From positions 372,001 to 436,000 of the forward strand of contig NZ_JMCB01000001.1 in the NCBI RefSeq assembly GCF_000737315.1: a stretch of DNA of 64,000 bases, in the 5' to 3' direction. The position numbers and the translations under genes are program-made. Of this stretch, positions 36,241 to 54,847 are shown in pieces (position 1 is the first letter of the stretch; each line of letters begins with the position of its first letter). The DNA comes from Hyalangium minutum (GTDB lineage: Bacteria; Myxococcota; Myxococcia; Myxococcales; Myxococcaceae). Below the pieces are notes generated by a model. It worked only from the letters and a program-made list of their open reading frames with translations. It was not told the DNA's origin and did no database searches.

Positions 36241-37305
36241 TCAGCCCGAAACAGGCTCGAAGGGTCCTCTCAAGCCCGAGCGGAAGAGGGCCAGGCTGAT
36301 CAGCGTGGGGATCGCGGAGAAGATGATCAGCCCCACCTTGGCGCCCGTCGTGAGGGGCTCGCCCGAGCTGTCGGGCATGAAGAGGACGGCAGCCACGCCC
36401 AGCCACCAGAGGCCGCAGAACGAGAGCCCGATCCCGCCGAACCCCAGCTTGAGCCACGACCCGAAGGTGCGCACGGGGGGACCGTGCCGGACAGCGCGCC
36501 GGGGAAGCTCCGGCTCGCGCACGGCCTCGGTGCCCTCGCCCCCCGCCATCAGCGCTCCCAGAGACGTCACCAGGACCGGCTGCTCCGTGGGAACCGGGGC
36601 CGTCAGCAGGGCCCCCGCGAAGACGGCCTGCCCGGCCAGCACCTGCTCGGACTGCAACTGCTTGTAGAGCTTGCGCCCCCAGCGGACCTCGATGAACAGC
36701 ACCACGAGCGCCAACACCGCGAATCCAGAGCCCGTGAAGAGGAAGGCGTCATAAGCACCGTGAAGGAGGATGGCCGAGCCCAGGCCCATCCACATCAAAG
36801 CGGAGCGCTGCCCTCCCTCGGCGAACCGCGCCCGGCCCAGGAAGGCGCCCATCACCACGCCCGCGAAGGCGTGACACGGCACGGCCGTGACCGCGCGCAG
36901 CACCGCCGTCTCCAGTCCGCCCGACCCCACGTAGAGGATGTTCTCCAGCGTCGCGAAGCCAAGCGAGGCGGTGGCGCCGTACACCACGCCATCCAGCGGC
37001 TCGTCGAAGTGGGACTTGCGCCACACGTACCAGCGCAGCACGAGGAACTTGAAGAACTCCTCCGGAATGGCCGCGCCGAGGAACGCCTTCACCAGCGCAT
37101 CGCTCCACATGTCGCCGGTGAAGCCCTGCCCCATGCTCTCGAGCGCCATCGCCACGGGCACCACGGGGACGCAGATGAACGCGCCCCACAGGAATGTCCT
37201 GATGAGCAGCCCACGGGGCTCGGGGTTCTTGTCCCTCGCGTAGACGTACCAGAGCAGCAACAGCGACGGGACGACCGCGGAGCCCCCCAACATGAGCACG
37301 GACAT
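36241..37305 (-). CDS. prsW: PrsW-family intramembrane metalloprotease
   Basis: D..PEP, PEEFFK, FDEPLDG..YG, GFATLEN, HAF, LHGAYD. Confidence 0.85.
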   Translation of the reverse strand: MSVLMLGGSAVVPSLLLLWYVYARDKNPEPRGLLIRTFLWGAFICVPVVPVAMALESMGQGFTGDMWSDALVKAFLGAAIPEEFFKFLVLRWYVWRKSHFDEPLDGVVYGATASLGFATLENILYVGSGGLETAVLRAVTAVPCHAFAGVVMGAFLGRARFAEGGQRSALMWMGLGSAILLHGAYDAFLFTGSGFAVLALVVLFIEVRWGRKLYKQLQSEQVLAGQAVFAGALLTAPVPTEQPVLVTSLGALMAGGEGTEAVREPELPRRAVRHGPPVRTFGSWLKLGFGGIGLSFCGLWWLGVAAVLFMPDSSGEPLTTGAKVGLIIFSAIPTLISLALFRSGLRGPFEPVSG

Positions 37306-37392
37306 GCGCCCACGGTAGCAGCACTCCCAGGCCGCGCCCTCCGCGGAGGTAGAACCCTCTTACGCCTGAGCTCTCCTCGGACACCGGCCTGG

Positions 37393-37438
37393 CCTGTCCG
37401 CTATAGCGGACAGGTTGACTCCATCTGCTATAGCGGAT
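37393..37438. promoter_or_regulatory. Tandem palindromic operator-like boxes flanking a TTGACT -35 element
   Basis: Perfect 22-bp CCTGTCCGCTATAGCGGACAGG (37393-37414); TTGACT (37415-37420); near-perfect ATCTGCTATAGCGGAT (37423-37438); weak -10 candidate TAGATA 17 bp after the -35. Confidence 0.6.
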
Positions 37439-37453
37439 AGATAGTTGAACATA

Positions 37454-37531
37454 ATGACATCCCCCGCTCCCCACTCGTGCTGTACGGGACGCGCCCCTCT
37501 CCACGCGCGTTGTTGCCAGCGATCTCGCTGA
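37454..37531 (+). CDS. Candidate cys-operon leader peptide MTSPAPHSCCTGRAPLHARCCQRSR
   Basis: 25-codon ORF with TGC-TGT and TGT-TGC pairs, upstream of cysH and followed by attenuator-like helices. No SD, so probably (near-)leaderless. Confidence 0.7.
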   Translation: MTSPAPHSCCTGRAPLHARCCQRSR

Positions 37532-37576
37532 TCGCAGCCGCCGGAGGTGTGACGCGTTTCGTGAGTGGTGTGTCAT

Positions 37577-37618
37577 ACGGCCCGCCCTCTTCACGAGGGC
37601 CGGGCCGTTTCTTTTTTC
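37577..37618 (+). terminator. Intrinsic terminator in the cys leader (attenuator)
   Basis: ACGGCCCGCCCTC-TTCAC-GAGGG(C)CGGGCCGT followed by TTCTTTTTTC, 16 nt before the cysH ATG. Confidence 0.8.
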
Positions 37619-37634
37619 TGTCTGGAGTCCCCCC

Positions 37635-38375
37635 ATGTCGCTGGCTCAGCCCCTCTCCGCGCAGCTCTCCCAGGCAGAGCTCGCCGCCGCTGCCGTGGAG
37701 CTGAAGACGGCCCCCGCTGAGCAGGTCCTCGCCTGGGCCGAACGCCGGTTCGGCTCCAGCGCAGCCATCGCGTCCAGCTTCGGCGCGGAGGATGTGGTCC
37801 TCATCGATCTGGCGCGCCAGCACGCGCCCAGCCTGCGCCTGTTCACGCTCGACACCGGCCGGCTGCCTCCGGAGACGTACGAGCTGATCGAGACGCTGCG
37901 CAAACGCTACGGGCTGGAGGTAGAGACCTTCTTCCCCCAGCGCGAGCGCGTGGAGACACTGGTGTCCACCCAGGGGTACTTCTCCTTTCGCCAGAGCCTG
38001 GAGGCTCGCAAGGCGTGTTGTGGCATCCGCAAGGTGGAGCCCCTGAAGCGCGCGCTCACGGGCCGGCAAGCGTGGGTGACGGGGATGCGCCGCGAGCAGT
38101 CCGTCACCCGCACCGGCGTGGAGACCGTGGAGTTCGACGCGGACCACGGCGGCCTGGCCAAGCTCAACCCGCTGGCGTCCTGGAGCGCGAAGCAGATCTG
38201 GTCGTACATCCAGGAGAACGGCGTCCCGTACAACGCGCTCCATGATCGCGGCTACCCGTCCATCGGCTGCGCGCCCTGCACGCGCGCGGTAAAGCCCTAC
38301 GAGGACGAGCGCGCCGGGCGCTGGTGGTGGGAGTCCGCAGACAAGAAGGAATGCGGGCTGCACGTGCGCGGCTGA
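37635..38375 (+). CDS. cysH: APS reductase (CysH, 4Fe-4S type)
   Basis: SSFG, DTG, CCGIRKVEPL, WVTGMRREQS, GYPSIGCAPCT, ECGLH. Confidence 0.93.
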   Translation: MSLAQPLSAQLSQAELAAAAVELKTAPAEQVLAWAERRFGSSAAIASSFGAEDVVLIDLARQHAPSLRLFTLDTGRLPPETYELIETLRKRYGLEVETFFPQRERVETLVSTQGYFSFRQSLEARKACCGIRKVEPLKRALTGRQAWVTGMRREQSVTRTGVETVEFDADHGGLAKLNPLASWSAKQIWSYIQENGVPYNALHDRGYPSIGCAPCTRAVKPYEDERAGRWWWESADKKECGLHVRG

Positions 38376-38393
38376 GCTCCCCGAGAACGGATC

Positions 38394-39044
38394 ATGGCCT
38401 CGCCCAGCACAGCTTTCGATTACCCGGTCTGCCTCCGGCTGCACGGCAAGCGCGTTCTCCTCATTGGCGCCGGAAACATCGCCGAGGGCCGTGCGCTCCA
38501 GCTCATCGAGACCGGCGCGCGGGTGAGAATGATCGCACCCCAGGCCACCGCCACGCTGAGGCGCCTCGCCGAGCAGGGACAATTGGAGCTGCTGGAGCGC
38601 CCTTATGCCCAGGGCGACCTGTCCGGGCATGCGCTGGTGTTCGTCGCCACGGATGATCGGCGGGTGAGCGAGGCGGTCGCGGAGGAGGCGCGAGCGCTCG
38701 GCATCTGGCTGAACGCGGCGGACGAGCCCGACCTGTGCGACTTCACGATTCCCTCCATTGGCCGCCGGGGCGCCATCACCGTTGCGGTCTCCACCCAGGG
38801 ACAGTCGCCCGCGCTGGCGCGGCACCTGCGGCAGAAGCTGACCGAGCAGATCTCGCTCCACCATGTGCAGCTCGCCCGCCTCAGCGGGTGGCTCCGGGAG
38901 CGGCTGCCCCGAGGACCTCGGCGCAGCCGGCTGCTGCGGCTGCTGGTGGAGGAAGACATTCGCGGACTGCTGGCCAAGGGCCAGCGCCGGGAGGCGTGGG
39001 CCCGGCTCCGCGCCGAGTTGGAAGCACTGGGAGAGACAACATGA
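38394..39044 (+). CDS. Precorrin-2 dehydrogenase/ferrochelatase (CysG N-terminal half)
   Basis: YPVCL.L.GKRVL.IGAG, LNAADEPDLCDF..P, AVST.G.SP.LAR. Confidence 0.85.
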   Translation: MASPSTAFDYPVCLRLHGKRVLLIGAGNIAEGRALQLIETGARVRMIAPQATATLRRLAEQGQLELLERPYAQGDLSGHALVFVATDDRRVSEAVAEEARALGIWLNAADEPDLCDFTIPSIGRRGAITVAVSTQGQSPALARHLRQKLTEQISLHHVQLARLSGWLRERLPRGPRRSRLLRLLVEEDIRGLLAKGQRREAWARLRAELEALGETT

Positions 39045-39838
39045 GTGGCGGTAACAAAGGTTGGGTGTACCTGGTGGGCGCGGGACCTGGAGATCCAGGC
39101 CTGCTGACGCTCCGGGCGGCGAGCCTGCTCGCCAGCGCGGACACCGTGGTGCATGACCGGCTCATCCACCCGGGAGTGCTGGAGCACGCGCGTCCCCACG
39201 CCCGCCTCATCTACGTGGGCAAGGAGGGTGGCGGAGACTCCGTACGGCAGGAGGACATCCACACCCTGCTCGTCCAGCAGGCGAGGCTGGGCCGAGCCGT
39301 GGTGCGGCTCAAGGGCGGCGACCCGTTCGTCTTCGGCCGAGGCGGCGAGGAGGCCCTCGCGCTCGAGGAGGCGGGCGTTCCGTACGAGGTGGTGCCGGGT
39401 GTCTCTAGCATCTCGGCCGTGCCCGCGGCGGCCGCCATCCCCATCACCCACCGGGGCCTGTCGGGGACGGTGACGTTCGCCACCGCGCACCTCGCGCATG
39501 AGACGCCGGACTGGGAGCACCTGGCCCGTTCGGAGACGTTGGTCCTCTTCATGGCGGGCCGGAAGCTGGAGGAGGCGACGCACGCGCTCATCAGCGCGGG
39601 GATGTCTCCGGGCACGCTCGCCGCCGCCGTGGAAGCTGGCACTTGGGAACACCAGCGCGTCGTCGAGGGAACGGCGGCCACCATTGCCTCGCGCGTGAGG
39701 GAGGCCGAGCTGGGCTCTCCCACGCTCCTCATCCTGGGCGCGGTGGTGTCGCTGCGCTCGCAGCTCACCTCGCTGGTGGCGAATACAGAAGCCGCGGGGC
39801 GCTCGCAGCCCCGCGTGGCGGAGGCTGGTCATGAGTGA
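39041..39838 (+). CDS. cobA: Uroporphyrinogen-III C-methyltransferase
   Basis: [37 protein letters not shown]. Confidence 0.92.
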
Positions 39839-40748
39839 GTCCACGTCCGCACGGCTGTCACACCTGTCGGTGCTCGAGGCGGAGAGCATCCACATCCTCC
39901 GCGAGACGGTGGCGGAGTTCGCCAACCCGGTGATGCTCTACAGCATCGGCAAGGACTCGCAGGTGCTGCTGCACCTGGCGCGCAAGGCCTTCCACCCGGC
40001 GCCCCTGCCCTTCCCGCTGCTCCACGTGGACACCACCTGGAAGTTCCGGGACATGTACACGTTCCGCGACCGGTTCACCGCGCAGCACGGGTTCCGGTTG
40101 CTGGTGCACACGAACCGCAAGGCGCTGGCCGAAGGCATGAACCCCTTCGACCACACCAGCCAGAAGTACACGCACGCGATGAAGACGCAGGCGCTGCTGG
40201 AGGCCCTGGCGATGCACGGCTTCGACGCGGCGTTCGGCGGAGCGCGGCGCGACGAGGAGAAGTCCCGCGCCAAGGAGCGGGTGTTCTCGTTCCGGGATCG
40301 CCACGGGCAGTGGGAGCCGCGGCGCCAGCGGCCCGAGCTGTGGAACCTCTACAACGGCCGCATCGACACGGGCGAGAGCATGCGCGTCTTCCCGCTCTCC
40401 AACTGGACCGAGCTGGACGTGTGGCACTACATCCTCAAGGAGAAGATCCCCGTGGTGCCCCTGTACTTCGCCGCCGAGCGTCCGGTGGTGGAGCGCAGCG
40501 GCAACCTCATCATGGTGGATGACGAGCGCATGCGGCTGAAGCCGGGCGAGAAGCCCGTGCTCAAGCGCGTACGGTTCCGGACGCTGGGCTGCTACCCGCT
40601 CAGCGGCGCCATCGAGTCCTCGGCCACCACGGTCGAGTCCGTCATCCACGAGATGGTCACCGCCCGCCACTCCGAGCGCCAGGGCCGGCTCATCGACCAC
40701 GACGAAGAGGGCTCCATGGAGCTCAAGAAGCGCGAGGGCTACTTCTAA
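39831..40748 (+). CDS. cysD: Sulfate adenylyltransferase subunit 2
   Basis: [36 protein letters not shown]. Confidence 0.95.
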
Positions 40749-42490
40749 TGGACACCTCACTCCAAGCGCCCGTCACGGACATCCAGCAGTTCCTGGTCGA
40801 CCACGCGAACAAGGAACTGCTGCGGCTGGTGGTGGTGGGCTCCGTGGACGACGGAAAGTCCACGCTCATCGGCCGGCTCCTCTACGAGTGCGACGGCCTG
40901 TTCGAGGATCAGATCTCCGCCGTGAAGCGCGCCACCGCCAAGCGCGTGGCGGCCAACGAGGGCGCCACGCCCACCACCGAGCTGCTGGCCCGAGGGCTTC
41001 AGGCGGCGGCCTCGGCGGCGCTGCCTCAGGAGGAGGAGATCGACTTCTCGCTCTTCACGGACGGCCTGCGCGCCGAGCGCGAGCAGGGCATCACGATTGA
41101 CGTGGCGTACCGGTACTTCTCCACGGCCAAGCGGAAGATCATCGTCGCGGACACTCCGGGACACATCCAGTACACGCGCAACATGGCCACCGGCGCCTCC
41201 ACGGCGGACGCGGCGGTCATCCTCGTGGACGCGCGCCTGGGCGTGCTGCCGCAGACGCGGCGCCATGCGTACATCGCCTCGCTGCTGGGCATCCCCTACC
41301 TGGCCGTCGCGGTGAACAAGATGGACTTGATGGGATTTGACCGGGCGCTCTTCGAGCGCATCGGCAGCGAGCTGGCCGGGTTCGCGAAGTCGCTCGGGTT
41401 CACCCAGGTGAAGCTGTTCCCCGTCAGCGCGAGCAAGGGCGACAACGTCACGCGCCCGAGCACCCGCACGCCGTGGCACGAGGGCGGCACGCTCCTGGGC
41501 TGGCTGGAGTCCCTGCCCCACCAGCGCCACCAGGACGAGGCTCCGTTCCGCTTCCCCGTGCAGTACGTGCTGCGCCCGCACCTGGACTACCGCGGGTTCG
41601 CCGGGCAGATCGCCTCGGGCACCGTGCGCGTGGGCGACGAGGTGGTGGTGCTGCCCTCGCAGCGCCGCACGCGGGTGACGGCCATCGACACCTTCGAGGG
41701 CGAGCTCCCGGCGCAGAGCGCGCCGTTCTCCGTCACGCTGCGGCTGGCGGATGAGGTGGACATCAGCCGCGGGGATGTCATCGCCCACGTGGCCGAGCCA
41801 CCTCAGGCGCTGAGCCGGCTGGACGCCATGCTGGTGTGGTTCGGCGAGCAGCCGCTGGATGGCTCCCGCCGTTACCTGGTGAAGAACTCCACGCGCACGG
41901 TGCCGGCCACGCTGGAGCAGATCCTCTGGCGCAAGGACCTGGAGAACCTCACCGAGGTCCCCGCGGATACGCTGTCGCTCAATGACATCGGCAAGGTGCG
42001 GCTCGCGGCCAAGCGCCCGCTGCTCTGCGATCCCTACCAGGACAACCGGAGCACTGGCGCCTTCATCGTCATCGACGCGCTCACCCACGACACGGTGGCA
42101 GCGGGGATGATCCTCGGACCCGCGAGCGATGGGGACAAGGCGGCACGCACCCTCATCAGCGCGCAGGAGCGGCGCGAGCGGCTCGGCCAGAAGGGCGAGG
42201 TCATCCTCCTGCCGGATTCCCCCGAGGCCGAGCAGCGGGCGTACCAACTGGAGCGCCACCTGTTCGATCAGGGGCGGCATGTCTCGGTCGTCCGGGGTGA
42301 CACAGAGGTGGCGTTGGCGCTGGCGGAGGCAGGGCTCATCGTCCTCCTGCACACCGTCGCGCCGCAGGCCCGGCGCGCGCTCCGCAACCAACTCCGTGAC
42401 GCGGGGCTGGGCGGAGGCGAGTTGGAGGCCACGGAGAATCTGGACGGATGGGTACGCCAGGTCCTAGCGGCTCAGGAGTCGAAGTCATGA
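40748..42490 (+). CDS. cysN: Sulfate adenylyltransferase subunit 1 with degenerate APS-kinase tail
   Basis: GSVDDGKSTLIGRL, EREQGITIDVAYRYF, DTPGH, NKMD, FRFPVQ, TGAFIVID. Confidence 0.93.
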   Translation: MDTSLQAPVTDIQQFLVDHANKELLRLVVVGSVDDGKSTLIGRLLYECDGLFEDQISAVKRATAKRVAANEGATPTTELLARGLQAAASAALPQEEEIDFSLFTDGLRAEREQGITIDVAYRYFSTAKRKIIVADTPGHIQYTRNMATGASTADAAVILVDARLGVLPQTRRHAYIASLLGIPYLAVAVNKMDLMGFDRALFERIGSELAGFAKSLGFTQVKLFPVSASKGDNVTRPSTRTPWHEGGTLLGWLESLPHQRHQDEAPFRFPVQYVLRPHLDYRGFAGQIASGTVRVGDEVVVLPSQRRTRVTAIDTFEGELPAQSAPFSVTLRLADEVDISRGDVIAHVAEPPQALSRLDAMLVWFGEQPLDGSRRYLVKNSTRTVPATLEQILWRKDLENLTEVPADTLSLNDIGKVRLAAKRPLLCDPYQDNRSTGAFIVIDALTHDTVAAGMILGPASDGDKAARTLISAQERRERLGQKGEVILLPDSPEAEQRAYQLERHLFDQGRHVSVVRGDTEVALALAEAGLIVLLHTVAPQARRALRNQLRDAGLGGGELEATENLDGWVRQVLAAQESKS

Positions 42491-44346
42491 GCTCGCTGCC
42501 CGCCAAGGGAGCGGGACGGCCTACAGGAGCACTGCCGATGGTCTCACCCTACGTGAGCGCCATGCTGGGCGAGGAGCGGAGCGCCCTTCTCCAGCGCGTG
42601 GTGGAGGGTCTGCCGTCCGAGACGCTCCACTGGCTGAGCGGCTACTTCGCCGGCCTCGCCACGCAGCGCGGCCCCGTTCAGGAGCAGGCGCCCGCGCCCA
42701 CGCCCGTGGTCCAGGCCGTGCCGGAGGCGTGGCTCACCATCATCTATGGCACGCAGACCAACAACAGCCGCATGCTGGCCGAGCGCCTCAAGCACCAGGC
42801 AGAGGCCTCGGGCCTCTCGGTGCGCCTGTACCGCGCGTCGGACTACCCGGTCCGGGAGATCGCGAAGGAGCGGCTGCTCTACATCGTCATCAGCACCCAG
42901 GGTGATGGAGATCCGCCGGATGACTCGCGCGGCTTCGTCGAGTTCCTCCTGAGCAAGAAGGCTCCCAAGCTGGAGCAACTGCGCTTCTCGGTGCTGGGCC
43001 TGGGCGATTCGAGCTATCCCAAGTACTGCGAGATCGGGAAGATCCTCGACACGCGGCTGGCCCAGCTGGGAGCCACCCGGCTGCTGAATCGCGCGGACTG
43101 CGATGTCGACTTCGAGCCTGTCGCCCAGGGCTGGCTCGATCAAGCTGTGGGCAAGGCCACGGAGGAGCTTGCGCCCAAGACGGCCACCGCGGTCGTCACG
43201 CCGCTGCGCACGGCCCCTCCCGCGCCAAAGCACGGCAAGGAGGCTCCCGTCACGGCGGAGATCCTCGTCAACCAGCGCCTGACCGGGCGCGGTGCGAACA
43301 AGGACGTGCGGCACATTGAGCTGTCGCTCGGGGACTCGGGCTTGGCGTACGAGCCCGGAGATTCGCTCGGCGTGTGGCCACGGAACGCTCCGGAGCTCGT
43401 GGCTGACTTCGTGTCCCTGCTCAAGGTCAACGGAGAGACAGAGGTCACCCGGGACGGCCGCGCCCTGCCCCTGCAGCAGTGGCTGACCGAGGAGCTGGAG
43501 CTGACCAAGGTGAGTAAGCCCTTCCTGGAGCGCCATGCCGCGCTCTCCGGGAGCACGGACCTCCAGCGCCTGCTCGCCCCTGAGGGGGCAGAGGCCTTCC
43601 GTGCGCTGCTCAAAACCCACCAGATCATCGACCTGCTGCGGCTGTGGCCCGCGCCATGGACGGCGGAGGAGCTGGTCCGCGCGCTGCGCAAGCTGGCACC
43701 TCGGAGCTACTCCATCGCTTCCAGCCAGAAGCGGGTCGGCACCGAGGCCCACCTGACGGTGGCGGTGGTGGACTACGTCGCCTTCGGGGCCCGCCACACG
43801 GGCACGGCCTCCTACTTCCTGGCCACGCGCACGGGAGACGAGGAGCGCGTGCGCGTCTTCGTCGAGCCGAACGATCGCTTCCGCCTGCCGCGCGACTCTG
43901 CCCGGGACGTCATCATGATCGGCCCTGGAACAGGGGTGGCCCCCTTCCGCGCCTTCGTACAGGAGCGCGCCGAGACGGGCGCGAAGGGCCGCAACTGGCT
44001 CTTCTTCGGTGAGCAGCACTTCCGCTCGCAGTTCCTCTACCAGACGGAGTGGCAGGAGGCGCTGAAGAAGGGCGAGCTGCACCGCATCTCCCTCGCCTTC
44101 TCGCGAGACCAGGTGGAGAAGATCTACGTGCAGCAGCGCCTGCGCGAGGCGGGCAAGGACCTCTACGCGTGGCTGGAGGGCGGCGCACACCTCTACGTGT
44201 GCGGCGATGCCCAGCGGATGGCGCCGGACGTCCACGAGGCCCTCATCGACATCGCCACCACCCACGGAGGCCGGAGCCGCGAGGACGCGGAGTCCTGGCT
44301 GTCCACCCTGCGCGACGAACAGCGCTACCAGCGCGACGTCTACTGA
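42487..44346 (+). CDS. cysJ: Sulfite reductase flavoprotein
   Basis: [53 protein letters not shown]. Confidence 0.93.
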
Positions 44347-44360
44347 TTCGGAGCATCGCC

Positions 44361-46076
44361 ATGAGCACCCCCACCAAGCCCCCAGCGCTCTCGGAGGCGG
44401 AGCAGATCAAGGCCAAGAGCCGCCGCCTGCGTGGCACCCTCGTCGAGAGCCTCGCCGATCCCGTGACGGGAGGGCTCGCTCCCGCGGACCAGAACCTCAT
44501 CAAGTTCCACGGCAGCTACCAGCAGGACAACCGGGACGTGCGCGAGGAGCGGCGGCAGCAGAAGCTCGAGCCGGCCTACGACTTCATGATCCGCACCCGC
44601 CTGCCCGGCGGCGTGGCGACCCCGGCACAGTGGCTCGCGCTGGATGCGCTCGCGCAGAAGTACGCCAACGGGACGCTGCGGCTCACCACCCGGCAGGCCT
44701 TCCAGCTCCACGGCGTCATCAAGACGGACCTGAAGCGCACCATGCAGGGGATCAACGCAGCGCTCCTGGACACCATCGCAGCCTGCGGAGACGTGAACCG
44801 CAACGTGATGTGCAATCCCAACCCCGTGGACTCGCGCGTCCACGAGGAGGCGCACCAGTGGGCGGTGAAGCTGTCCGAGCACCTGCTGCCGAAGACCCGG
44901 GCCTATTACGAGGTCTGGCTCGACAAGGAGAAGGTCGCAGGGAGCGGCGAGGAGGAGGAGCCCATCCTCGGCGCCACCTACCTGCCCCGGAAGTTCAAGG
45001 CCGCCATCGCGGTGCCTCCCATCAATGACGTGGACGTCTTCTCGCAAGACCTGGGTTTCATCGCCATCCACGAGGAGGACCGGCTGCTCGGGTTCAACGT
45101 CACCGTCGGCGGAGGCATGGGCGCCACGCACGGGGACGCCGCCACCTTCCCGCGGCTCGCGGACGTCATCGGCTTCATCCTCCCCGAGCAGCTCCTGGCC
45201 GTCGCGGAGAACGTGGTGAAGGTGCAGCGCGACTACGGCGACCGCACCACCCGAAAGCACGCGCGCTTGAAGTACACCATCGAGGATCGCGGCATCGCAT
45301 GGTTCGTCTCCGAGCTGGAGTCGCGGCTGGGCTTCTCACTGCAGCCCACGCGTCCCTTCACCTTCGAGCACAACGGCGACCTCTTCGGGTGGCGCGAGGG
45401 CCATGACGGGCGCTGGCACCTGACGCTGCGCCTGGAGAGCGGGCGCGTGGCGGACACCCCGGGGGCGCGGATGCTCACAGGCCTGCGGGAGATCGCCCAG
45501 CTGCACCCCGGAGACTTCCGGCTGACGCCCAACCAGAACCTGATCATCGCCGGCGTGACGCCGGAGTGGAAAGAGGACATCGACTCGCTCGTGGAGGCCC
45601 ACGGTCTGGGGGGCTTCCGCCGCGCGAGCCCGCTGCGCCTCAACGCGCTCGCCTGCGTGGCGCTACCCACGTGCGGCCTGGCCATGGCCGAGGCTGAGCG
45701 CTACCTGCCTGACATCGTCGGAAAGCTGGAGGAGCGCCTCGCGGCGCACGGCCTCCAGGACGAGAAGATCCTCCTGAGAATCACGGGATGTCCCAACGGC
45801 TGCGCACGCCCCTACCTGGCGGAGATCGCGCTCGTGGGCAAAGCCCCCGGCCGCTACAACCTCTTCCTGGGTGGGGACGTGCGCGGACAGCGGCTCAACC
45901 GCCTATACCGGGAGAACATCGACGAAGCGGGCGTCCTCGCGGCGCTCGAGCCGCTGTTCTCCCAGTACGCGCGGGAGCGCCGTCCCGGCGAGGGCTTCGG
46001 TGACTTCACCGTCCGCGCCGGCCACGTCTCGTCTCCTCCTGCTTCCCCACCCCTTGCTGCTGCTGCCTCGAGGTAG
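44361..46076 (+). CDS. cysI: Sulfite reductase hemoprotein
   Basis: [33 protein letters not shown]. Confidence 0.93.
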
Positions 46077-46079
46077 CCC

Positions 46080-47150
46080 ATGTCTTCCGTTCCCTCTGTG
46101 AACCGTTCCATCTCCTGGATGCTGAGCTCCGCCGCGGTGCTCCTGCTCCCCGGCCTCCTGGCGTCGCTGAGTGCGTGCACGAAACCGGGCCCGGCGGGTG
46201 CCGAGCCCGTGACGCTGCTCAACGTCTCCTATGATCCGACGCGGGAGCTCTACGAGGACTTCAACACCACCTTCGCGAAGCACTACGAGGCCACCCACGA
46301 CGGTGCGAAGATCTCCGTGAAGCAGTCCCACGGCGGCTCCGGCAAGCAGGCGCGCGCGGTGATCGACGGGCTGGACGCGGACATCGTCACGCTGGCGCTC
46401 GCGTACGACGTGGACATGCTCCACGACAAGGGCAACCTCATCCCAAAGGACTGGCAGGCGCGGCTGCCGAACAACAGCTCGCCGTACACCTCCACCATCG
46501 TCTTCGTGGTGCGCAAGGGCAACCCGAAGAACATCCGCGACTGGGAGGACCTCGTGCAGCCGGGCGTGGCCGTCATCACCCCCAATCCGAAGACCTCGGG
46601 TGGCGCGCGGTGGAACTACCTGGCCGCCTGGGGCCACGCGCTGCGCAAGGCCGGCAATGACGAGGCCAAGGCGCAGGAGTTCGTGGCGGCCCTCTTCAAG
46701 AACGTGCCCGTGCTGGACTCGGGCGCCCGGGGCTCCACCACCACGTTCGCCGAGCGCGGCCTGGGGGATGTACTCATCGCATGGGAGAACGAGGCGCTCC
46801 TGCTGACCGACGAGGTGGGCAAGGACAAGTTCGAGATCATCGTGCCCTCGGACAGCATCCTCGCCGAGCCGCCCGTCACGATCGTGGACAAGAACGTAGA
46901 CAGGAAGGGCACGCGGGCCGCGGCGGAGGCGTATCTCCAGTACCTCTACTCCGACGAGGGCCAGGAGCTCGCCGCGAAGCACCACTACCGCCCGCGCTCG
47001 GAGAAGGTGGCCGCGAAGTACGCCAGCCACTTCCCCTCCGTGCGCCTGTTCACCATCGACGAGGTCTTCGGAGGCTGGCGCAAGGCGCAGCAGACGCACT
47101 TCGATGACCGCGGCGTGTTCGACACCATCTACACGCCGAAGGCGCAGTAG
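46080..47150 (+). CDS. sbp: Sulfate ABC transporter substrate-binding protein
   Basis: [36 protein letters not shown]. Confidence 0.93.
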
Positions 47151-47159
47151 CCGGACTCC

Positions 47160-48002
47160 TTGGCCATGGCACGACGCGCGCGCCGCATCCTCCCAGGCTT
47201 CGGACTGTCGCTGGGGCTGAGCTGGCTCTACCTGGGCCTGCTCGTGCTGCTGCCGCTGTCCGGGCTCTTCCTCAAGACGTTCACGCTGACGTGGGAGCAC
47301 TTCTGGGAGACGGTGGCTTCCCCGCGCGCGCTCGCTGCCTACCAGCTCACGTTCGGTGCCTCGGTGGTGGCGGCGCTGGCCAATGCCGTCTTCGGCCTGC
47401 TCGTGGCCTGGGTGCTGGTCCGCTACCGCTTCCCGGGCAAGAGCCTCGTGGATGCGCTGGTGGATCTGCCCTTCGCCCTGCCCACCGCCGTCGCGGGCCT
47501 GACGCTGACGAGTCTGTATGCCAGCACTGGCTGGTACGGGCGCTACCTGGAGGCCGCGGGCATCAAGGTGGCGTACTCCTCGATTGGAATCGTGGTGGCG
47601 CTCACCTTCATCGGGCTGCCCTTCGTGGTGCGCACCGTCCAGCCCGTCCTCGAGGAGATCGACGCAGATGTGGAGGAGGCCGCCGCCACGCTTGGGGCGA
47701 CGCCATGGCAGACCTTCACCCGCATCATCTTCCCCAGCATCCTTCCGGCGCTGCTGAGTGGCTTCACGCTGGCGCTCGCACGGGCCATTGGGGAGTACGG
47801 CTCGGTCGTCTTCATCTCCGGCAACATGCCCATGCGTACGGAGATCGTCCCGCTGCTCATCATCACCAAGCTGGAGCAGTACGACTACGCGGGTGCCACG
47901 GCTCTGGCCGTCGTGATGCTGACGGTGTCGTTCGGCCTGCTGCTGGCCATCAACCTGCTCCAGCGCTGGGCCCAGCGCCGGTTCGAAGTCCGGCCGGGAT
48001 AG
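47160..48002 (+). CDS. cysT: Sulfate ABC permease CysT/CysU
   Basis: DLPFALPTAVAG, VVRTVQPVLE, GEYGSVVFISGN. Confidence 0.93.
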   Translation: MAMARRARRILPGFGLSLGLSWLYLGLLVLLPLSGLFLKTFTLTWEHFWETVASPRALAAYQLTFGASVVAALANAVFGLLVAWVLVRYRFPGKSLVDALVDLPFALPTAVAGLTLTSLYASTGWYGRYLEAAGIKVAYSSIGIVVALTFIGLPFVVRTVQPVLEEIDADVEEAAATLGATPWQTFTRIIFPSILPALLSGFTLALARAIGEYGSVVFISGNMPMRTEIVPLLIITKLEQYDYAGATALAVVMLTVSFGLLLAINLLQRWAQRRFEVRPG

Positions 48003-48008
48003 CTTTCC

Positions 48009-48857
48009 ATGCACGTCTCCTCGCTCCCGCTTCAACGCAGGACCCACGCCGCGGCGGGCTCGACGCTCGTGCGCTGGCTGTTGATCGGCGGGGCCCTGCT
48101 CTTCCTGGGCATCTTCCTCGTCGTCCCCTTGGTGGCCGTCTTCACCTATGCCTTCCAGAAGGGCGTGGGGGCCTACCTGGCGGCGCTGGCGGAGCCGGAG
48201 ACTTGGTCCGCCATCCGCCTAACTCTGATGGCTGCGGTGATCGCGGTTCCCGCCAACCTCATCTTTGGCGTGGCCGCCGCGTGGCTCATCGCCCGGTTCC
48301 GGTTCCGTGGGCGGGACCTGCTCGTCACGCTCATCGATCTTCCGTTCAGCGTGTCGCCGGTGATCGCAGGCCTCATCTTCGTGCTGCTCTTCGGGCGGCA
48401 GGGCTGGTTGGGGCCGTGGCTGGCCGAGCATGATCTCCACATCATCTTCGCCGTGCCGGGCATCGTGCTGGCCACGCTCTTCGTGACGTTCCCCTTCGTC
48501 GCTCGCGAGGTGCTTCCGGTGATGCAGGCACAGGGAAGCGACGAGGAGGAGGCGGCCCTCACCCTGGGCGCCAGCGGCTGGTACATGTTCCTGCGCGTGA
48601 CGCTGCCGAAGGTGAAGTGGGGCGTCATCTACGGCGTCATCCTCTGCAACGCGCGGGCGATGGGCGAGTTCGGCGCGGTCTCGGTGGTCTCCGGGCACGT
48701 GCGCGGGGTGACCACCACGCTGCCGCTGCACGCGGAGATCCTCTACAACGAGTACGACTTCGTCGGGGCCTTCGCTGCGGCCTCGCTGCTGACCGTGCTC
48801 GCGCTCATCACCCTGGTCATCAAGAAGTACGTAGAATGGAGGGCGCACGCGCCATGA
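48009..48857 (+). CDS. cysW: Sulfate ABC permease CysW
   Basis: DLPFSVSPVIAG, FPFVAREV, ARAMGEFGAVSVVSG. Confidence 0.93.
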   Translation: MHVSSLPLQRRTHAAAGSTLVRWLLIGGALLFLGIFLVVPLVAVFTYAFQKGVGAYLAALAEPETWSAIRLTLMAAVIAVPANLIFGVAAAWLIARFRFRGRDLLVTLIDLPFSVSPVIAGLIFVLLFGRQGWLGPWLAEHDLHIIFAVPGIVLATLFVTFPFVAREVLPVMQAQGSDEEEAALTLGASGWYMFLRVTLPKVKWGVIYGVILCNARAMGEFGAVSVVSGHVRGVTTTLPLHAEILYNEYDFVGAFAAASLLTVLALITLVIKKYVEWRAHAP

Positions 48858-49930
48858 GCGTCGTCGTCGAGTCGCTGACCAAGCGCTTCACCGCGGGAGG
48901 CACGCCGGCTGTCTCGGACGTGTCGTTCCAAGCGCCAGCCGGGGCCATCACCACCCTGCTGGGCCCTTCAGGGGCGGGCAAGTCCACCATCCTCCGGTTG
49001 ATCGCCGGGCTGGAGCTTCCGGATGCGGGGCGGGTGCTGATCGATGGCGTGGACTGCACGGAGCTGTCCGTGCAGCGGCGCGGCATCGGGGTGGTGTTCC
49101 AGAGCTACGCCCTCTTCAAGCACATGACGGTGCGGGAGAACATCGCGTTCGGGCTGAACGTCCGCAAGCAGTCCCGCTCCGAGACCGAGGCGCGGGTCGA
49201 CGAGATGCTCAAGCTGGTCCAGCTCGAGGAGCTGGGACATCGCTACCCAGGGCAGCTCTCGGGGGGACAGCGACAGCGCGTGGCCTTTGCGCGAGCCCTG
49301 GCGATCCGGCCCAAGCTGCTGCTGCTGGACGAGCCGTTCGGAGCGCTCGACACCCGGGTGCGCGTGGAGCTGCGCGAGTGGCTGCACGAGCTGCATGTGC
49401 AGACCGGCGTGACGACCCTGCTCGTGACGCACGACCAGGAGGAGGCGCTGGAGATCTCCCAGCACGTCGTCATCATGGAGGCGGGCCGGGTTGCCCAGGC
49501 TGGACCGCCCGCGGAGATCTATGACCGTCCCGCGACGCCCTTCGTCGCCTCGTTCGTCGGCGGCACAAGCGTCCTGAGCGGGCACGTCCGTGAGGGCCGG
49601 GCGCACCTGGGCTCGCTCCACGTGGCGGCGCCCGCGACGGCGCGGGAAGGCGAAGCGGTGAGGGTCTTCGTCCGGCCGCACGACATCAAGCTCGTGAAGA
49701 CGGTGGGAGGCAACCACGTCAACGGGGCCAACGGCGCGGTTCCCAGCCGGGTCGAGCGCTTCAAGCCCGTGGGCGGCTACGTGAAGGTGCTGCTCAAGCT
49801 GCCCTCGGGAGACACGGTGGCGGTGGAGGTACCGCGCTCCGAGTTCGATCAGCTCGGAGTCGCGGAGGGTGACTCGGTTCAGGCTGACGTGCGCACGGCC
49901 AGCGTCTTCGTGGGCGACTTCTCGATCTGA
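48854..49930 (+). CDS. cysA: Sulfate ABC ATPase
   Basis: GPSGAGKS, LSGGQRQR, LLLDEPFGALD, C-terminal TOBE-like region. Confidence 0.92.
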   Translation: MSVVVESLTKRFTAGGTPAVSDVSFQAPAGAITTLLGPSGAGKSTILRLIAGLELPDAGRVLIDGVDCTELSVQRRGIGVVFQSYALFKHMTVRENIAFGLNVRKQSRSETEARVDEMLKLVQLEELGHRYPGQLSGGQRQRVAFARALAIRPKLLLLDEPFGALDTRVRVELREWLHELHVQTGVTTLLVTHDQEEALEISQHVVIMEAGRVAQAGPPAEIYDRPATPFVASFVGGTSVLSGHVREGRAHLGSLHVAAPATAREGEAVRVFVRPHDIKLVKTVGGNHVNGANGAVPSRVERFKPVGGYVKVLLKLPSGDTVAVEVPRSEFDQLGVAEGDSVQADVRTASVFVGDFSI

Positions 49931-54053: not shown

Positions 54054-54847
54054 CCGTGCACCGCCACGGCCCGCTGCCGCTCGCGCTGCCACAGGCAGAT
54101 GGCCGCGATGAGGAGGCACACCGGGAGGAAGGACGCCACGCCCACGCCCTCGTGGAGCCACGAGGGCCCAAGGATTCGCCCCCGCTCCACGAGCGTGAGC
54201 GCGCTGACTCGAAGTGCATTGCCGAAGAGGATGACGCCCACTCCGAGCACGCACACCCAGAGCGTCCGCCCCGCCCCCAGCCGCAACAGACAGGCCAGCA
54301 TGACCACCAGGAAGAGCCCCACCCAGAGCATGCGCGCCCCGCTGCACGGCGCGTCCACGAGGATGACGTCCGAGCCGATCGCCAGGCTGGCCCCCTCTCG
54401 CACCGCGGGCAGCCCCATCCCTCGCAGCATGGGCACAGCCAGCGCCGCCGCAGCGAGCCGCAGCGGATAGCCCAGGTAGAACTGCACCGACGACAGGACC
54501 GGCAGCGCCAGGAGCGCCAGCAGCCAGGTGCCCAGATGGAACGCACGGCCCTCGGTCATCCTCGAGACGATCGCGGTGACACACAGCAAGCACACCGCGG
54601 CGCGCACCAGCGGTGGCAGCCACGAGTGGCTCACGGCCACCGCCACATTGACGGCCGCGAGCCTCCAGACATCCCGCTCCGGCAGCGGGTGCCGTGCGCC
54701 CCGAGGCAGCAGCAGCACCAGCGCCAGCAGGGCCAACAGGCCCCACGGCTCATCCGAGCCGTCCTGGACTCGGCGGGCGTACCAGCTCCACGCCTCCCAG
54801 CCGGCGAGGAACTGCACCCCGAGGAGCAAATACGAGCGCCGCATCAT
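54050..54847 (-). CDS. Exosortase (XrtQ-like)
   Basis: Cys-Arg-His triad: VDAPCSG, GNALRV, WLHEGVG; N-terminal DGSDEPWG. Confidence 0.8.
   Translation of the reverse strand: MMRRSYLLLGVQFLAGWEAWSWYARRVQDGSDEPWGLLALLALVLLLPRGARHPLPERDVWRLAAVNVAVAVSHSWLPPLVRAAVCLLCVTAIVSRMTEGRAFHLGTWLLALLALPVLSSVQFYLGYPLRLAAAALAVPMLRGMGLPAVREGASLAIGSDVILVDAPCSGARMLWVGLFLVVMLACLLRLGAGRTLWVCVLGVGVILFGNALRVSALTLVERGRILGPSWLHEGVGVASFLPVCLLIAAICLWQRERQRAVAVHG

What the first reader, a model, noticed from the sequence alone, without database searches (positions are those of the whole stretch)
37454..37618. Candidate cysteine-sensing leader-peptide attenuator for the whole sulfate assimilation operon
Seen: a 25-aa ORF (MTSPAPHSCCTGRAPLHARCCQRSR) with Cys9-Cys10 and Cys20-Cys21. 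Segment 1, CGCGUUGU (37506-13, overlapping Cys20), can pair with segment 2, GUGACGCG (37549-56). Segment 2, GCCG+UGUGAC (37540-53), can instead pair with GUCAUACGGC (37572-81), which removes the 5' arm of the strong terminator (37577-37618) lying 16 nt before cysH. Established: this matches trp/his-type geometry. A ribosome stalled at Cys20-21 would mask segment 1 and allow the antiterminator; a ribosome at the stop (37529-31) would cover the start of segment 2 and allow termination. Cys-rich leader ORFs are known in actinobacteria, but I know of no such intrinsic-terminator attenuator for a myxobacterial cysH-cysG-cysDN-cysJI-sbp-cysTWA operon. Function is inference, and the pairings were found by eye.
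Basis: partly seen in the sequence, partly recalled or inferred. Interest (0 to 1): 0.9.

Follow-up and report, generated by a model that had tools for sequence, protein, structure and literature searches.

The report
Cysteine-codon leader attenuator before cysH operon
The leader in front of an 11-gene sulfate-to-cysteine operon of a myxobacterium holds a tiny cysteine-codon reading frame, a tightly folded RNA and a strong transcription stop signal, so it probably switches the operon on when cysteine runs short, although this copy looks weaker than the clear double versions found in Myxococcus relatives.

Summary
These are the 25-codon ORF (37454-37531) with Cys9-10 and Cys20-21, and an intrinsic terminator (37577-37617, -26 kcal/mol) 16 nt before cysH. 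It is the strongest of only four canonical terminators in the 64-kb window. No Rfam family matches.

A second candidate (37559-37596, -15 kcal/mol) covers more.

A folding model shows ribosome-dependent switching. With no ribosome the terminator arm is almost unpaired (0.11; 0.5% of shuffles as low). With a ribosome on the ORF it is about 0.5 paired. Stalling at Cys is not clearly distinguished from sitting at the stop codon.

In the two closest relatives the ORF keeps its start, length and stop, but only Cys20 is invariant. Hyalangium versicolor has lost the ORF.

Myxococcus and Pyxidicoccus cysH leaders carry two tandem Cys-rich ORFs (5-8 Cys); seven of the eight units also have a predicted antiterminator and terminator.

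Two palindromic operators overlap the promoter.

Verdict: partly supported, a new variant of ribosome-mediated attenuation.

The parts
37393..37414 (.). Operator-like site O1, a perfect 22-bp palindrome CCTGTCCGCTATAGCGGACAGG that abuts the -35 box
   Evidence: Related sites lie at the same place in L081-L084, L087 and L001, with weaker versions in L085, L086, L088 and L213. The only strong matches in the 64-kb window are this site and O2.
37415..37420 (+). -35 box TTGACT
   Evidence: Read by eye. TTGAC[T/G], 17 nt, TAnnnN recurs in all 13 related leaders. The consensus scan did not call it because TAGATA lacks T at position 6.
37420..37441 (.). Operator-like site O2 (TCCATCTGCTATAGCGGATAGA), covering the promoter spacer and part of the -10 box
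   Evidence: 27-nt start-to-start spacing from O1 and 88% identity to the O1 core.
37438..37443 (+). -10 box TAGATA. The inferred transcription start is near 37449-37451, which leaves a 5' UTR of about 3-5 nt
   Evidence: Spacing read. An ATG lies 9-11 nt after the -10 box in 5 independent lineages. The transcription start is inferred, not measured.
37454..37531 (+). Leader ORF of 25 codons plus TGA (MTSPAPHSCCTGRAPLHARCCQRSR). It has no Shine-Dalgarno sequence, so translation would be nearly leaderless
   Evidence: Start, length and stop are kept in L081 and L082 without indels.
37478..37483 (+). Cys9-Cys10 codons TGC TGT
   Evidence: The relatives have Leu-Cys (L081) and Ser-Ser (L082) here.
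37511..37516 (+). Cys20-Cys21 codons TGT TGC
   Evidence: Cys20 is invariant in the three clade sequences. Cys21 is Arg in L081. These codons also lie in a conserved stem, so codon and structure constraints cannot be separated.
37455..37573 (+). Closed leader domain P1. The 5' end of the ORF (37455-69) pairs with 37561-73, and the domain encloses the long hairpin 37484-37562 (-38.8 kcal/mol). It acts as an anti-antiterminator that keeps the terminator arm free
   Evidence: consensus fold of window, L081 and L082. Fold z = -4.3. With no ribosome the terminator arm is paired upstream with probability 0.11, and only 0.5% of shuffles are as low.
37540..37581 (+). It overlaps the basal 2-5 nt of the terminator arm
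   Evidence: -11.8 and -14.9 kcal/mol. 91% of cells pair in the 3-sequence alignment, with no compensatory change.
37559..37596 (+). Alternative antiterminator AT2. UCGUGAG, GGUG and GUC pair with GGC, CGCC and UUCACGA of the terminator 5' arm, the loop and the first 2 nt of the 3' arm. It ties up 7 of the 13 arm nucleotides plus the loop
   Evidence: -15 to -16 kcal/mol and within 0.2 kcal/mol of the best fold of 37532-37594. It is the predicted stall-state fold in L081. 95% of cells pair and 13 of 14 pairs are invariant.
37577..37617 (+). Intrinsic terminator: a 13-bp G+C-rich stem with one bulge, a 5-nt loop, then UUUCUUUUUU
   Evidence: It is the strongest of 4 in the window. Position and hairpin are conserved in 13 leaders, with a different sequence in Stigmatella.
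37624..38375 (+). cysH Shine-Dalgarno GGAG (37624-27) and cysH (37635-38375, PAPS/APS reductase)
37635..49930 (+). The controlled operon: cysH, precorrin-2 dehydrogenase/ferrochelatase, uroporphyrinogen methyltransferase, cysD, cysN, cysJ, cysI, sbp, cysT, cysW, cysA. Genes are tightly spaced or overlapping, and a convergent gene follows
   Evidence: The same gene order is called in the relatives.

Best explanation
Positions 37393-37634 are the promoter and 5' leader of the sulfate-assimilation operon, and they carry two stacked controls.

(1) Operators. A sigma-70-type promoter (TTGACT, 17 nt, TAGATA) is flanked and overlapped by two palindromic operators for an unidentified transcription factor.

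(2) Attenuator. The transcript starts about 3-5 nt before an AUG, so a ribosome can load almost at the 5' end and translate a 25-codon ORF containing two Cys-Cys pairs.
- With no ribosome on the leader, it folds into a closed domain (37455-37573). This leaves the terminator's 5' arm free, and the -26 kcal/mol terminator stops most transcripts 16 nt before cysH.
- With a ribosome held on the ORF, as expected when Cys-tRNA is scarce, the domain cannot form. RNA polymerase then reads into cysH.

Shown: the sequence elements, the folds, the conservation of terminator and promoter, the position of the start codon, and Cys-rich tandem versions in relatives.
Inferred: the transcription start, translation of the ORF, stalling at Cys codons, and read-through.

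The copy in this window looks weaker than the Myxococcus ones. It has fewer Cys codons, a modest antiterminator, and a switch that depends on whether a ribosome is present rather than on where it sits.
For: - The ORF, Cys codons and terminator are at the stated coordinates.
- Cys content is unusual: P about 0.012, and this is one of 2 among 226 sORFs with two CC pairs.
- The terminator is the strongest of only 4 in 64 kb, and it lies in a leader between divergent genes.
- The terminator is conserved in 13 leaders although the upstream neighbour gene differs between species.
- There is no Rfam match.
- The leader folds far better than shuffles (z = -4.3).
- Probability that the terminator arm pairs upstream is 0.11 without a ribosome and 0.38-0.61 with one at a Cys codon. 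Both the low free value and the free-to-stall jump are reached by only 0.5% of shuffles.
- AT2 is nearly isoenergetic with the best fold and is kept in L081 and L082.
- An ATG lies 9-11 nt after the -10 box in five non-alignable lineages.
- Myxococcus and Pyxidicoccus leaders have two tandem ORFs with 5-8 Cys (P = 6e-5 to 0.036 each). In seven of the eight units (not L212 unit A) the stop codon lies in or next to the antiterminator's 5' arm, and the predicted antiterminators are -30 to -47 kcal/mol.
- Cys codons in the 11 leader ORFs counted (window, L081, L082 and the 8 Myxococcus/Pyxidicoccus ORFs) are 66% TGT, against 14% in the operon genes and 22% out of frame.
- The operon makes cysteine, the amino acid that would be sensed.
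- Cys-codon leader ORFs that sense cysteine are experimentally established in mycobacteria (bioRxiv 10.1101/834739).
Against: - In the two closest relatives only Cys20 is invariant, and their ORFs hold 2 Cys, which is not enriched (P = 0.23).
- H. versicolor keeps the promoter, operators and terminator but has a 4-codon ORF.
- Hyalangium rubrum, Archangium, Stigmatella and a Myxococcaceae MAG have no clear Cys-rich ORF.
- The pairing level in the stall state (0.51) is no higher than in shuffled leaders (mean 0.49), and the stall-versus-stop difference is not significant (17% of shuffles).
- At equilibrium the terminator forms in every ribosome state.
- Candidate pairings show no compensatory changes, but there are only 3 close sequences.
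- The conserved TGT of Cys20 also lies in a conserved stem.
- There is no Shine-Dalgarno sequence, and the transcription start is inferred only.
- The 5' part of the window leader is not significantly alignable to the Myxococcus units.
Confidence: 0.55

Rival explanations
1. The operators do the regulating, and the terminator is a translation-independent damper or a target of an unknown trans-acting factor. An unidentified transcription factor binding the two palindromes senses sulfur status. The 25-codon ORF is a decaying remnant or a chance open frame in G+C-rich sequence, and its Cys codons no longer matter.
For: - The perfect 22-bp palindrome and a second copy overlap the promoter and are conserved across genera.
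- H. versicolor and the MAG L001 keep the operators and terminator with no Cys ORF.
- Cys codons are poorly conserved in the nearest relatives.
- Open frames of 25 codons are common at this G+C content.
- Stall-state pairing is no better than in shuffles.
Against: - A start codon 9-11 nt after the -10 box is conserved in five independent lineages.
- Two tandem Cys pairs directly in front of a cysteine-synthesis operon are unlikely by chance.
- The closed leader domain is disrupted specifically when the ORF is occupied.
- Related genera show clear Cys-rich attenuator units, and Pyxidicoccus has both operator-like repeats and attenuators, so the two layers can coexist.
Confidence: 0.3
2. The leader is a riboswitch-like RNA, or a target of an RNA-binding protein, that senses a sulfur metabolite or a protein directly and controls the terminator without translation.
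For: The leader is highly structured (z = -4.3), and a terminator-based expression platform is conserved.
Against: - No Rfam family matches, even at E = 10.
- The interior of the leader turns over completely between genera and even within Hyalangium, in both length and sequence, so there is no conserved aptamer core.
- The features that are conserved are the start codon position and the terminator, not an RNA core.
Confidence: 0.07
3. The leader works like the mycobacterial translational attenuators. A ribosome stalled in the Cys ORF unmasks the cysH ribosome-binding site rather than preventing transcription termination.
For: The sORF is nearly leaderless and carries Cys codons, as in the mycobacterial Cys ribulon (bioRxiv 10.1101/834739).
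Against: - The cysH Shine-Dalgarno sequence (37624-27) lies downstream of the terminator and is unpaired in the predicted folds.
- A canonical hairpin with a U-tract sits between the ORF and cysH.
- No duplex that sequesters the ribosome-binding site was found.
Confidence: 0.04

Closest known systems
Classical ribosome-mediated (leader-peptide) transcription attenuators of amino-acid operons: trpL, hisL, leuL, thrL, pheL, ilvL in Proteobacteria and trp/ilvB in Actinobacteria
   Same: A short leader ORF rich in codons for the operon's end product, an intrinsic terminator just before the first structural gene, and alternative RNA folds whose choice depends on the ribosome. The Myxococcus and Pyxidicoccus units fit this scheme in seven of eight units: the stop codon lies in or next to the antiterminator's 5' arm.
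   Different: The sensed amino acid is cysteine. I found no terminator-based example for cysteine in the literature searched. The ORF has no Shine-Dalgarno sequence and starts about 3-5 nt from the inferred 5' end. In this window the antiterminator is weak, the stop codon is 45 nt from the terminator, and the switch appears to be ribosome present versus absent. The relatives carry two units in tandem, and the promoter also bears operators.
Mycobacterial polycysteine leaderless sORF attenuators, the 'Cys ribulon' (Canestrari et al., bioRxiv 10.1101/834739 and Mol Microbiol 2020), and the Cys leader ORFs predicted in Actinobacteria (PMC1262725)
   Same: Unannotated Cys-codon sORFs at the very 5' end of transcripts of cysteine and sulfur-assimilation operons, proposed to sense Cys-tRNA by ribosome stalling.
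   Different: In mycobacteria the stalled ribosome opens a duplex that masks the downstream ribosome-binding site, and no conserved terminator hairpin was found (PMC1262725). Here a canonical hairpin with a U-tract lies between the ORF and cysH, and the cysH ribosome-binding site is not masked. The phylum is different (Myxococcota), and there is no sequence homology.
Transcription-factor control of cys regulons (CysB in gamma-proteobacteria, CymR in Bacillus)
   Same: Palindromic sites overlap the promoter of the sulfate-assimilation operon.
   Different: The factor is unidentified. The motif (G/A)TCCG(C/T)TATAnYGGA(C/T) was not matched to any described regulator here, and it is combined with a leader terminator.

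Membership tests
Leader-peptide (ribosome-mediated) transcription attenuator | A short translatable ORF in the 5' leader | tested here: inconclusive
   The ORF at 37454-37531 is present, and its start, length and stop are kept in L081 and L082. It has no Shine-Dalgarno sequence. Translation relies on an inferred transcription start about 3-5 nt upstream. This is supported only indirectly, by an ATG 9-11 nt after the -10 box in 5 lineages.
Leader-peptide (ribosome-mediated) transcription attenuator | Enrichment of codons for the amino acid made by the operon | tested here: inconclusive
   The window has 4 Cys in 25 aa as two tandem pairs (P about 0.012). L081 and L082 have 2 Cys (P = 0.23), and H. 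versicolor has lost the ORF. Enrichment is strong in Myxococcus and Pyxidicoccus (5-8 Cys per ORF).
Leader-peptide (ribosome-mediated) transcription attenuator | An intrinsic terminator between the leader ORF and the first structural gene | tested here: met
   Positions 37577-37617: 13 bp plus UUUCUUUUUU, -26 kcal/mol. It is the strongest in the window and is conserved in 13 leaders.
Leader-peptide (ribosome-mediated) transcription attenuator | An antiterminator that overlaps the terminator's 5' arm and forms only when the ribosome stalls at the regulatory codons | tested here: inconclusive
The arm pairs upstream with probability 0.11 free, about 0.5 stalled and 0.35 at the stop. The free-to-stall jump is significant (0.5% of shuffles), but the stall-versus-stop difference is not (17%). 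There is no covariation among the 3 sequences.
Leader-peptide (ribosome-mediated) transcription attenuator | The downstream operon synthesises the sensed amino acid | tested here: met
   The operon runs cysH, siroheme genes, cysDN, cysJI, sbp, cysTWA.
Leader-peptide (ribosome-mediated) transcription attenuator | Read-through responds to supply of the amino acid and depends on the regulatory codons | not testable with these tools
   This needs Term-seq or a Northern blot, and reporter mutants.
Mycobacterial polycysteine leaderless sORF translational attenuator | The transcript begins at or next to the sORF start codon | tested here: inconclusive
   The inferred promoter places the transcription start 3-5 nt before the ATG. 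There are no transcription-start data.
Mycobacterial polycysteine leaderless sORF translational attenuator | [quoted passage not shown] | tested here: not met
   The cysH GGAG (37624-27) lies 3' of the terminator and is unpaired in the predicted folds. A canonical terminator is present instead.
Known riboswitch or leader RNA families (Rfam 15) | A match to a curated covariance model | tested here: not met
   There are only three chance-level hits (E about 6-7) across 36800-38200, all far below the gathering scores.

The most novel reading that the evidence does not exclude
Myxococcaceae and Archangiaceae control sulfate assimilation with a previously undescribed family of nearly leaderless Cys-codon leader ORFs coupled to canonical intrinsic terminators. 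This would be the first terminator-based attenuator for cysteine and the first leader-peptide attenuation reported in Myxococcota. The unit is duplicated in tandem in Myxococcus and Pyxidicoccus, and it is layered on, and over evolution traded against, an unknown factor that binds the promoter palindromes. The window holds a reduced single-unit form.
Probability: 0.6. Interest if true: 0.65.

Novelty: new variant of a known kind. Interest (0 to 1): 0.5.

Why it matters
Cysteine is the one biosynthetic amino acid for which textbook terminator-based attenuation has not been described. Known control is by transcription factors (CysB, CymR), by T-box or S-box RNAs, or, in mycobacteria, by translational attenuation.

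A myxobacterial Cys attenuator would extend the classical mechanism to a new amino acid and a new phylum. It would also give a natural series for studying how attenuators and repressors replace each other: tandem double units, a single weakened unit, and operator-only leaders.

It would explain how a 12-kb, 11-gene sulfur-assimilation operon is tuned in organisms where canonical terminators are rare. On the practical side, these sORFs are essentially absent from protein databases (one match in a 5.8-billion-sequence search), so genome annotation of this group misses them.

Tried and rejected
Only L001 and L002 were useful.
- The single metagenome scan, with the 16-mer GTTGAMCATAATGACA, returned chance matches only. 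None of L090-L169 aligns to the leader. This scan was wasted.
They yielded only 3 distinct leaders from the window's own clade, so covariation could not be tested properly.
- Rfam at E up to 10 gave nothing real.
- NCBIfam gave nothing for 7 leader peptides.
- A profile of the ORF-B peptides searched against 5.8 billion proteins gave a single unnamed hit.
- I tested whether the window leader is a truncated homologue of Myxococcus unit A, because an in-frame TGA at 37550-52 resembles the unit-A stop context. Local alignment scores outside the terminator are within the shuffle range, so I dropped the idea.
- I tested whether the operators are SahR sites. The SahR papers do not cover Myxococcales, and the consensus they state (ATC, 10 nt, GAT) does not fit, so I dropped it.
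- Equilibrium folding with a masked ribosome predicts that the terminator forms in every state. It therefore cannot support or refute a kinetic switch.
- The ensemble metric gives stall-versus-stop differences for the Myxococcus units in the expected direction in 4 of the 5 units tested, at only P about 0.06-0.08 per unit against shuffles. L213 unit A shows no difference (P = 0.48).
- The promoter scan tool found no site, and the terminator scan tool missed the bulged terminator.
Full report
1. WHAT IS THERE

Positions 37306-37634 are a divergent intergenic region. On one side is a PrsW-family protease gene (36241-37305, minus strand). On the other is cysH (37635-38375, PAPS_reduct).

cysH opens a tightly packed plus-strand operon that ends at about 49930, in front of a convergent gene. 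Its genes, in order:
- precorrin-2 dehydrogenase/ferrochelatase
- uroporphyrinogen-III methyltransferase
- cysD and cysN
- cysJ and cysI
- a sulfate-binding protein
- cysT, cysW and cysA

The closest CysH proteins come from uncultured relatives (91-92% identity), then Hyalangium and Stigmatella (80-83%). The window is therefore from an Archangiaceae-like myxobacterium.

2. CHECK OF THE OBSERVATION

- the 25-codon ORF (ATG 37454, TGA 37529-31) with TGC TGT at 37478-83 and TGT TGC at 37511-16;
- the complementary segments;
- a terminator with 5' arm 37577-89, loop 37590-94, 3' arm 37595-608 and UUUCUUUUUU, 16 nt before the cysH ATG.

Its free energy is -26.2 to -26.7 kcal/mol. The pattern scanner missed it because of one bulge.

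My own scan of the whole window on both strands found only four hairpin-plus-U-tract sites. This one is the strongest. It cannot be a gene-end terminator, because the upstream gene is on the other strand.

The ORF's cysteine content is unusual but not extreme. Of 226 ATG-sORFs of 15-60 aa in the window, 15 have at least 4 Cys and only 2 have two CC pairs. Binomial P is about 0.012.

3. STRUCTURE OF THE LEADER

No Rfam family matches. The leader folds much better than shuffles (z = -4.3).

It is a long hairpin 37484-37562 (-38.8 kcal/mol), enclosed by pairing of the ORF's first codons (37455-69) with 37561-73, and followed by the terminator.

It overlaps only the basal 2-5 nt of the 13-nt terminator arm.

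A second candidate, AT2 (37559-37596, -15 to -16 kcal/mol), ties up 7 arm nucleotides plus the loop. It is within 0.2 kcal/mol of the best fold of 37532-37594, and it is the predicted stall-state fold in relative L081.

None shows a compensatory change, so they cannot be ranked by covariation.

4. RIBOSOME-MASK MODELLING

I masked the RNA up to 13 nt past the A-site codon and folded the transcript as it exists just before the terminator's 3' arm is made.

The mean probability that the terminator's 5' arm is paired with upstream sequence was:
- 0.11 with no ribosome;
- 0.38-0.61 with a ribosome at a Cys codon;
- 0.35 with a ribosome at the stop codon.

Comparison with 200 dinucleotide shuffles of the upstream leader:
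- The low free value is reached by only 0.5% of shuffles, and so is the free-to-stall jump.
- The stall value itself is ordinary (shuffle mean 0.49).
- The stall-versus-stop difference is not significant (17% of shuffles).

At equilibrium the terminator forms in every state, as in classical attenuators, where control is kinetic.

What can be said for this window is limited. The leader is built so that, left alone, it insulates the terminator arm. A ribosome occupying the ORF breaks that insulation. The model gives no support for a trp-like distinction between a ribosome at the Cys codons and one at the stop codon.

5. RELATIVES

Twelve contig look-ups plus two useful genome hits gave 13 distinct cysH leaders.

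(a) The terminator and the GGAG ribosome-binding site are conserved in all of them, although the upstream neighbour gene differs. In Stigmatella the hairpin is kept with a different sequence.

(b) A TTGAC[T/G], 17 nt, TAnnnN promoter recurs in all of them. A start codon lies 9-11 nt after the -10 box in five lineages whose leaders do not otherwise align: the window clade, H. rubrum, Stigmatella, Archangium, and Myxococcus hansupus with L002. By my estimate the chance is about 0.03 per lineage. A nearly leaderless sORF is therefore the conserved feature.

(c) In the window's own clade the ORF keeps start, length and stop without indels, while a 13-nt indel lies just after the stop. The peptides are:
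- window: MTSPAPHSCCTGRAPLHARCCQRSR
- L081: MTSPAPHSLCPGRAPSPARCRQRPH
- L082: MTSPVPTASSPRRAPPAARCCQRLR

Only Cys20 is invariant, and it also lies in a conserved stem. H. versicolor keeps the operators, the promoter, the sequence CATAATGACA and the terminator, but its ORF is MTNR*.

(d) M. hansupus, L002, M. stipitatus and Pyxidicoccus parkwayensis carry two tandem units.
- ORF-A examples: MTHLPTPTAALFSRRCCRTCSCCRLPDLGC and MTSTPMAALLRRCCRRACACCALSGLGC.
- ORF-B examples: ...GACCRCCACPPPSGCRASRSA and ...GMCCACCLACACPVCPPPGGCRAARSG.
- These ORFs hold 5-8 Cys (P = 6e-5 to 0.036), and their length differences are whole codons.
- With a ribosome at the Cys cluster, a -30 to -47 kcal/mol hairpin sequesters 6-10 of the 11-14 arm nucleotides. 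With a ribosome at the stop codon, the 5' half of that hairpin is covered.
- M. stipitatus unit A lacks a clear terminator.
- The unit-B antiterminator keeps 94% of cells paired in four species, against 38-48% when the partner columns are slid, with one compensatory pair.
- The ensemble metric goes in the expected direction in 4 of the 5 units tested, at only P about 0.06-0.08 per unit against shuffles. L213 unit A shows no difference.

(e) Cys codons in the 11 leader ORFs counted (window, L081, L082 and the 8 Myxococcus/Pyxidicoccus ORFs) are 66% TGT. The figure is 14% in the operon genes and 22% out of frame.

(f) Outside the terminator, the window leader is not significantly alignable to the Myxococcus units.

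Two palindromic sites flank and overlap the promoter:
- 37393-37414, a perfect 22-mer, CCTGTCCGCTATAGCGGACAGG;
- 37420-37441.

They are the only strong matches to this motif in the window.

Related sites, with consensus (G/A)TCCG(C/T)TATAnYGGA(C/T), sit at the same place in the window clade, both Hyalangium species and L001. Weaker versions occur in Stigmatella, Archangium and Pyxidicoccus. They are absent from M. hansupus, L002 and M. stipitatus. The factor that binds them is unknown.

7. INTERPRETATION

Most likely (0.55), the leader is a ribosome-dependent transcription attenuator that senses cysteine through Cys-tRNA, working together with a promoter-bound factor. The copy in this window is a reduced form:
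- four Cys codons;
- a switch that depends on ribosome presence.

The main rival (0.3) is that the operators and a translation-independent terminator do the work and the ORF is vestigial. This is supported by the weak conservation of Cys codons in the nearest relatives and the loss of the ORF in H. versicolor.

A riboswitch is unlikely because the interior of the leader turns over completely between genera. Mycobacterial-type masking of the ribosome-binding site is not seen.

8. COMPARISON WITH WHAT IS KNOWN

Cys-codon leader ORFs were predicted in Actinobacteria without terminators (PMC1262725). In mycobacteria they were shown to act by unmasking a ribosome-binding site (bioRxiv 10.1101/834739, cited as established in PMC13236596 and PMC13402693).

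My literature searches found no description of a leader-peptide attenuator in Myxococcus, and no terminator-based one for cysteine. The leader peptides match no NCBIfam model and are essentially absent from a 5.8-billion-sequence protein collection.

I therefore rate this a new variant of a known kind. At the family level it is moderately interesting. For this particular window the case is only half made.

9. LIMITS

- Only three distinct sequences represent the window's clade.
- The metagenome scan was wasted on a pattern that was too short.
- The transcription start, translation of the ORF, stalling and read-through are all inferred.

Noticed in passing
window 37393-37414 and 37420-37441: Two palindromic operator-like sites flank and overlap the cysH promoter. 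The first is a perfect 22-mer, CCTGTCCGCTATAGCGGACAGG. The motif (G/A)TCCG(C/T)TATAnYGGA(C/T) is conserved at the same position in several genera. The factor that binds it is unknown, and there are no other sites in the window.
   Followed up: partly
L089 about 2045-2500, L002 about 2474-2937, L212 about 2043-2500, L213 about 2026-2500: Myxococcus and Pyxidicoccus cysH leaders carry two tandem Cys-rich sORFs (5-8 Cys each). Seven of the eight units also have a predicted antiterminator and terminator; in M. stipitatus (L212) unit A no clear terminator was found. A double attenuator of this kind was not found in the literature searched.
   Followed up: yes
window 37635-49930: The 11 proteins of the sulfate-assimilation operon are very poor in cysteine: 22 Cys in 4106 codons (0.54%), with TGC 19 and TGT 3. 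The 11 leader ORFs counted in this window and its relatives use TGT for 39 of 59 Cys codons.
   Followed up: partly
whole window, both strands: Only four canonical hairpin-plus-U-tract terminators occur in 64 kb: 37577-37608 (+), 39815-39793 (-), 27110-27071 (-) and 4909-4870 (-). Intrinsic terminators seem rare in this genome, which makes the one in the leader stand out.
   Followed up: partly
window 33860-36157 (-): This 765-aa protein combines a membrane dipeptidase domain (Peptidase_M19) with a C-terminal Dickkopf_N cysteine-rich domain, a domain best known from animal Wnt antagonists. The same gene lies next to cysH in L081.
   Followed up: no
L002 (BNCN01000014.1): The record is titled 'Comamonas sp. 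KCTC 72670'. Its cysH (80% identical to the window) and its leader are almost identical to those of Myxococcus hansupus (L089). The assembly is probably mislabelled or contaminated.
   Followed up: no
L084 about 2330-2504; L085 and L088 leaders: In H. versicolor, Stigmatella sp. and Archangium gephyra a leader ORF reads through the terminator hairpin. In H. versicolor a GTG-ORF ends in an ATGA overlap with the cysH start and has two Cys codons just before the terminator arm. This may be a different, occlusion-type arrangement.
   Followed up: no
window 37495-37505 and 37585-37595: There is a direct repeat, CCCTCTCCACG and CCCTCTTCACG. The first copy is inside the leader ORF. The second is the distal terminator arm plus the loop. 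Both are complementary to the G-rich segments 37543-49 and 37559-68, which gives those segments a choice of partner.
   Followed up: partly
window 54631-54753 (-): This is the only other sORF in the window with two CC pairs (MSRGACWPCWRWCCCCLGAHG...). It lies inside and overlaps long ORFs, and it is probably a chance out-of-frame product.
   Followed up: no
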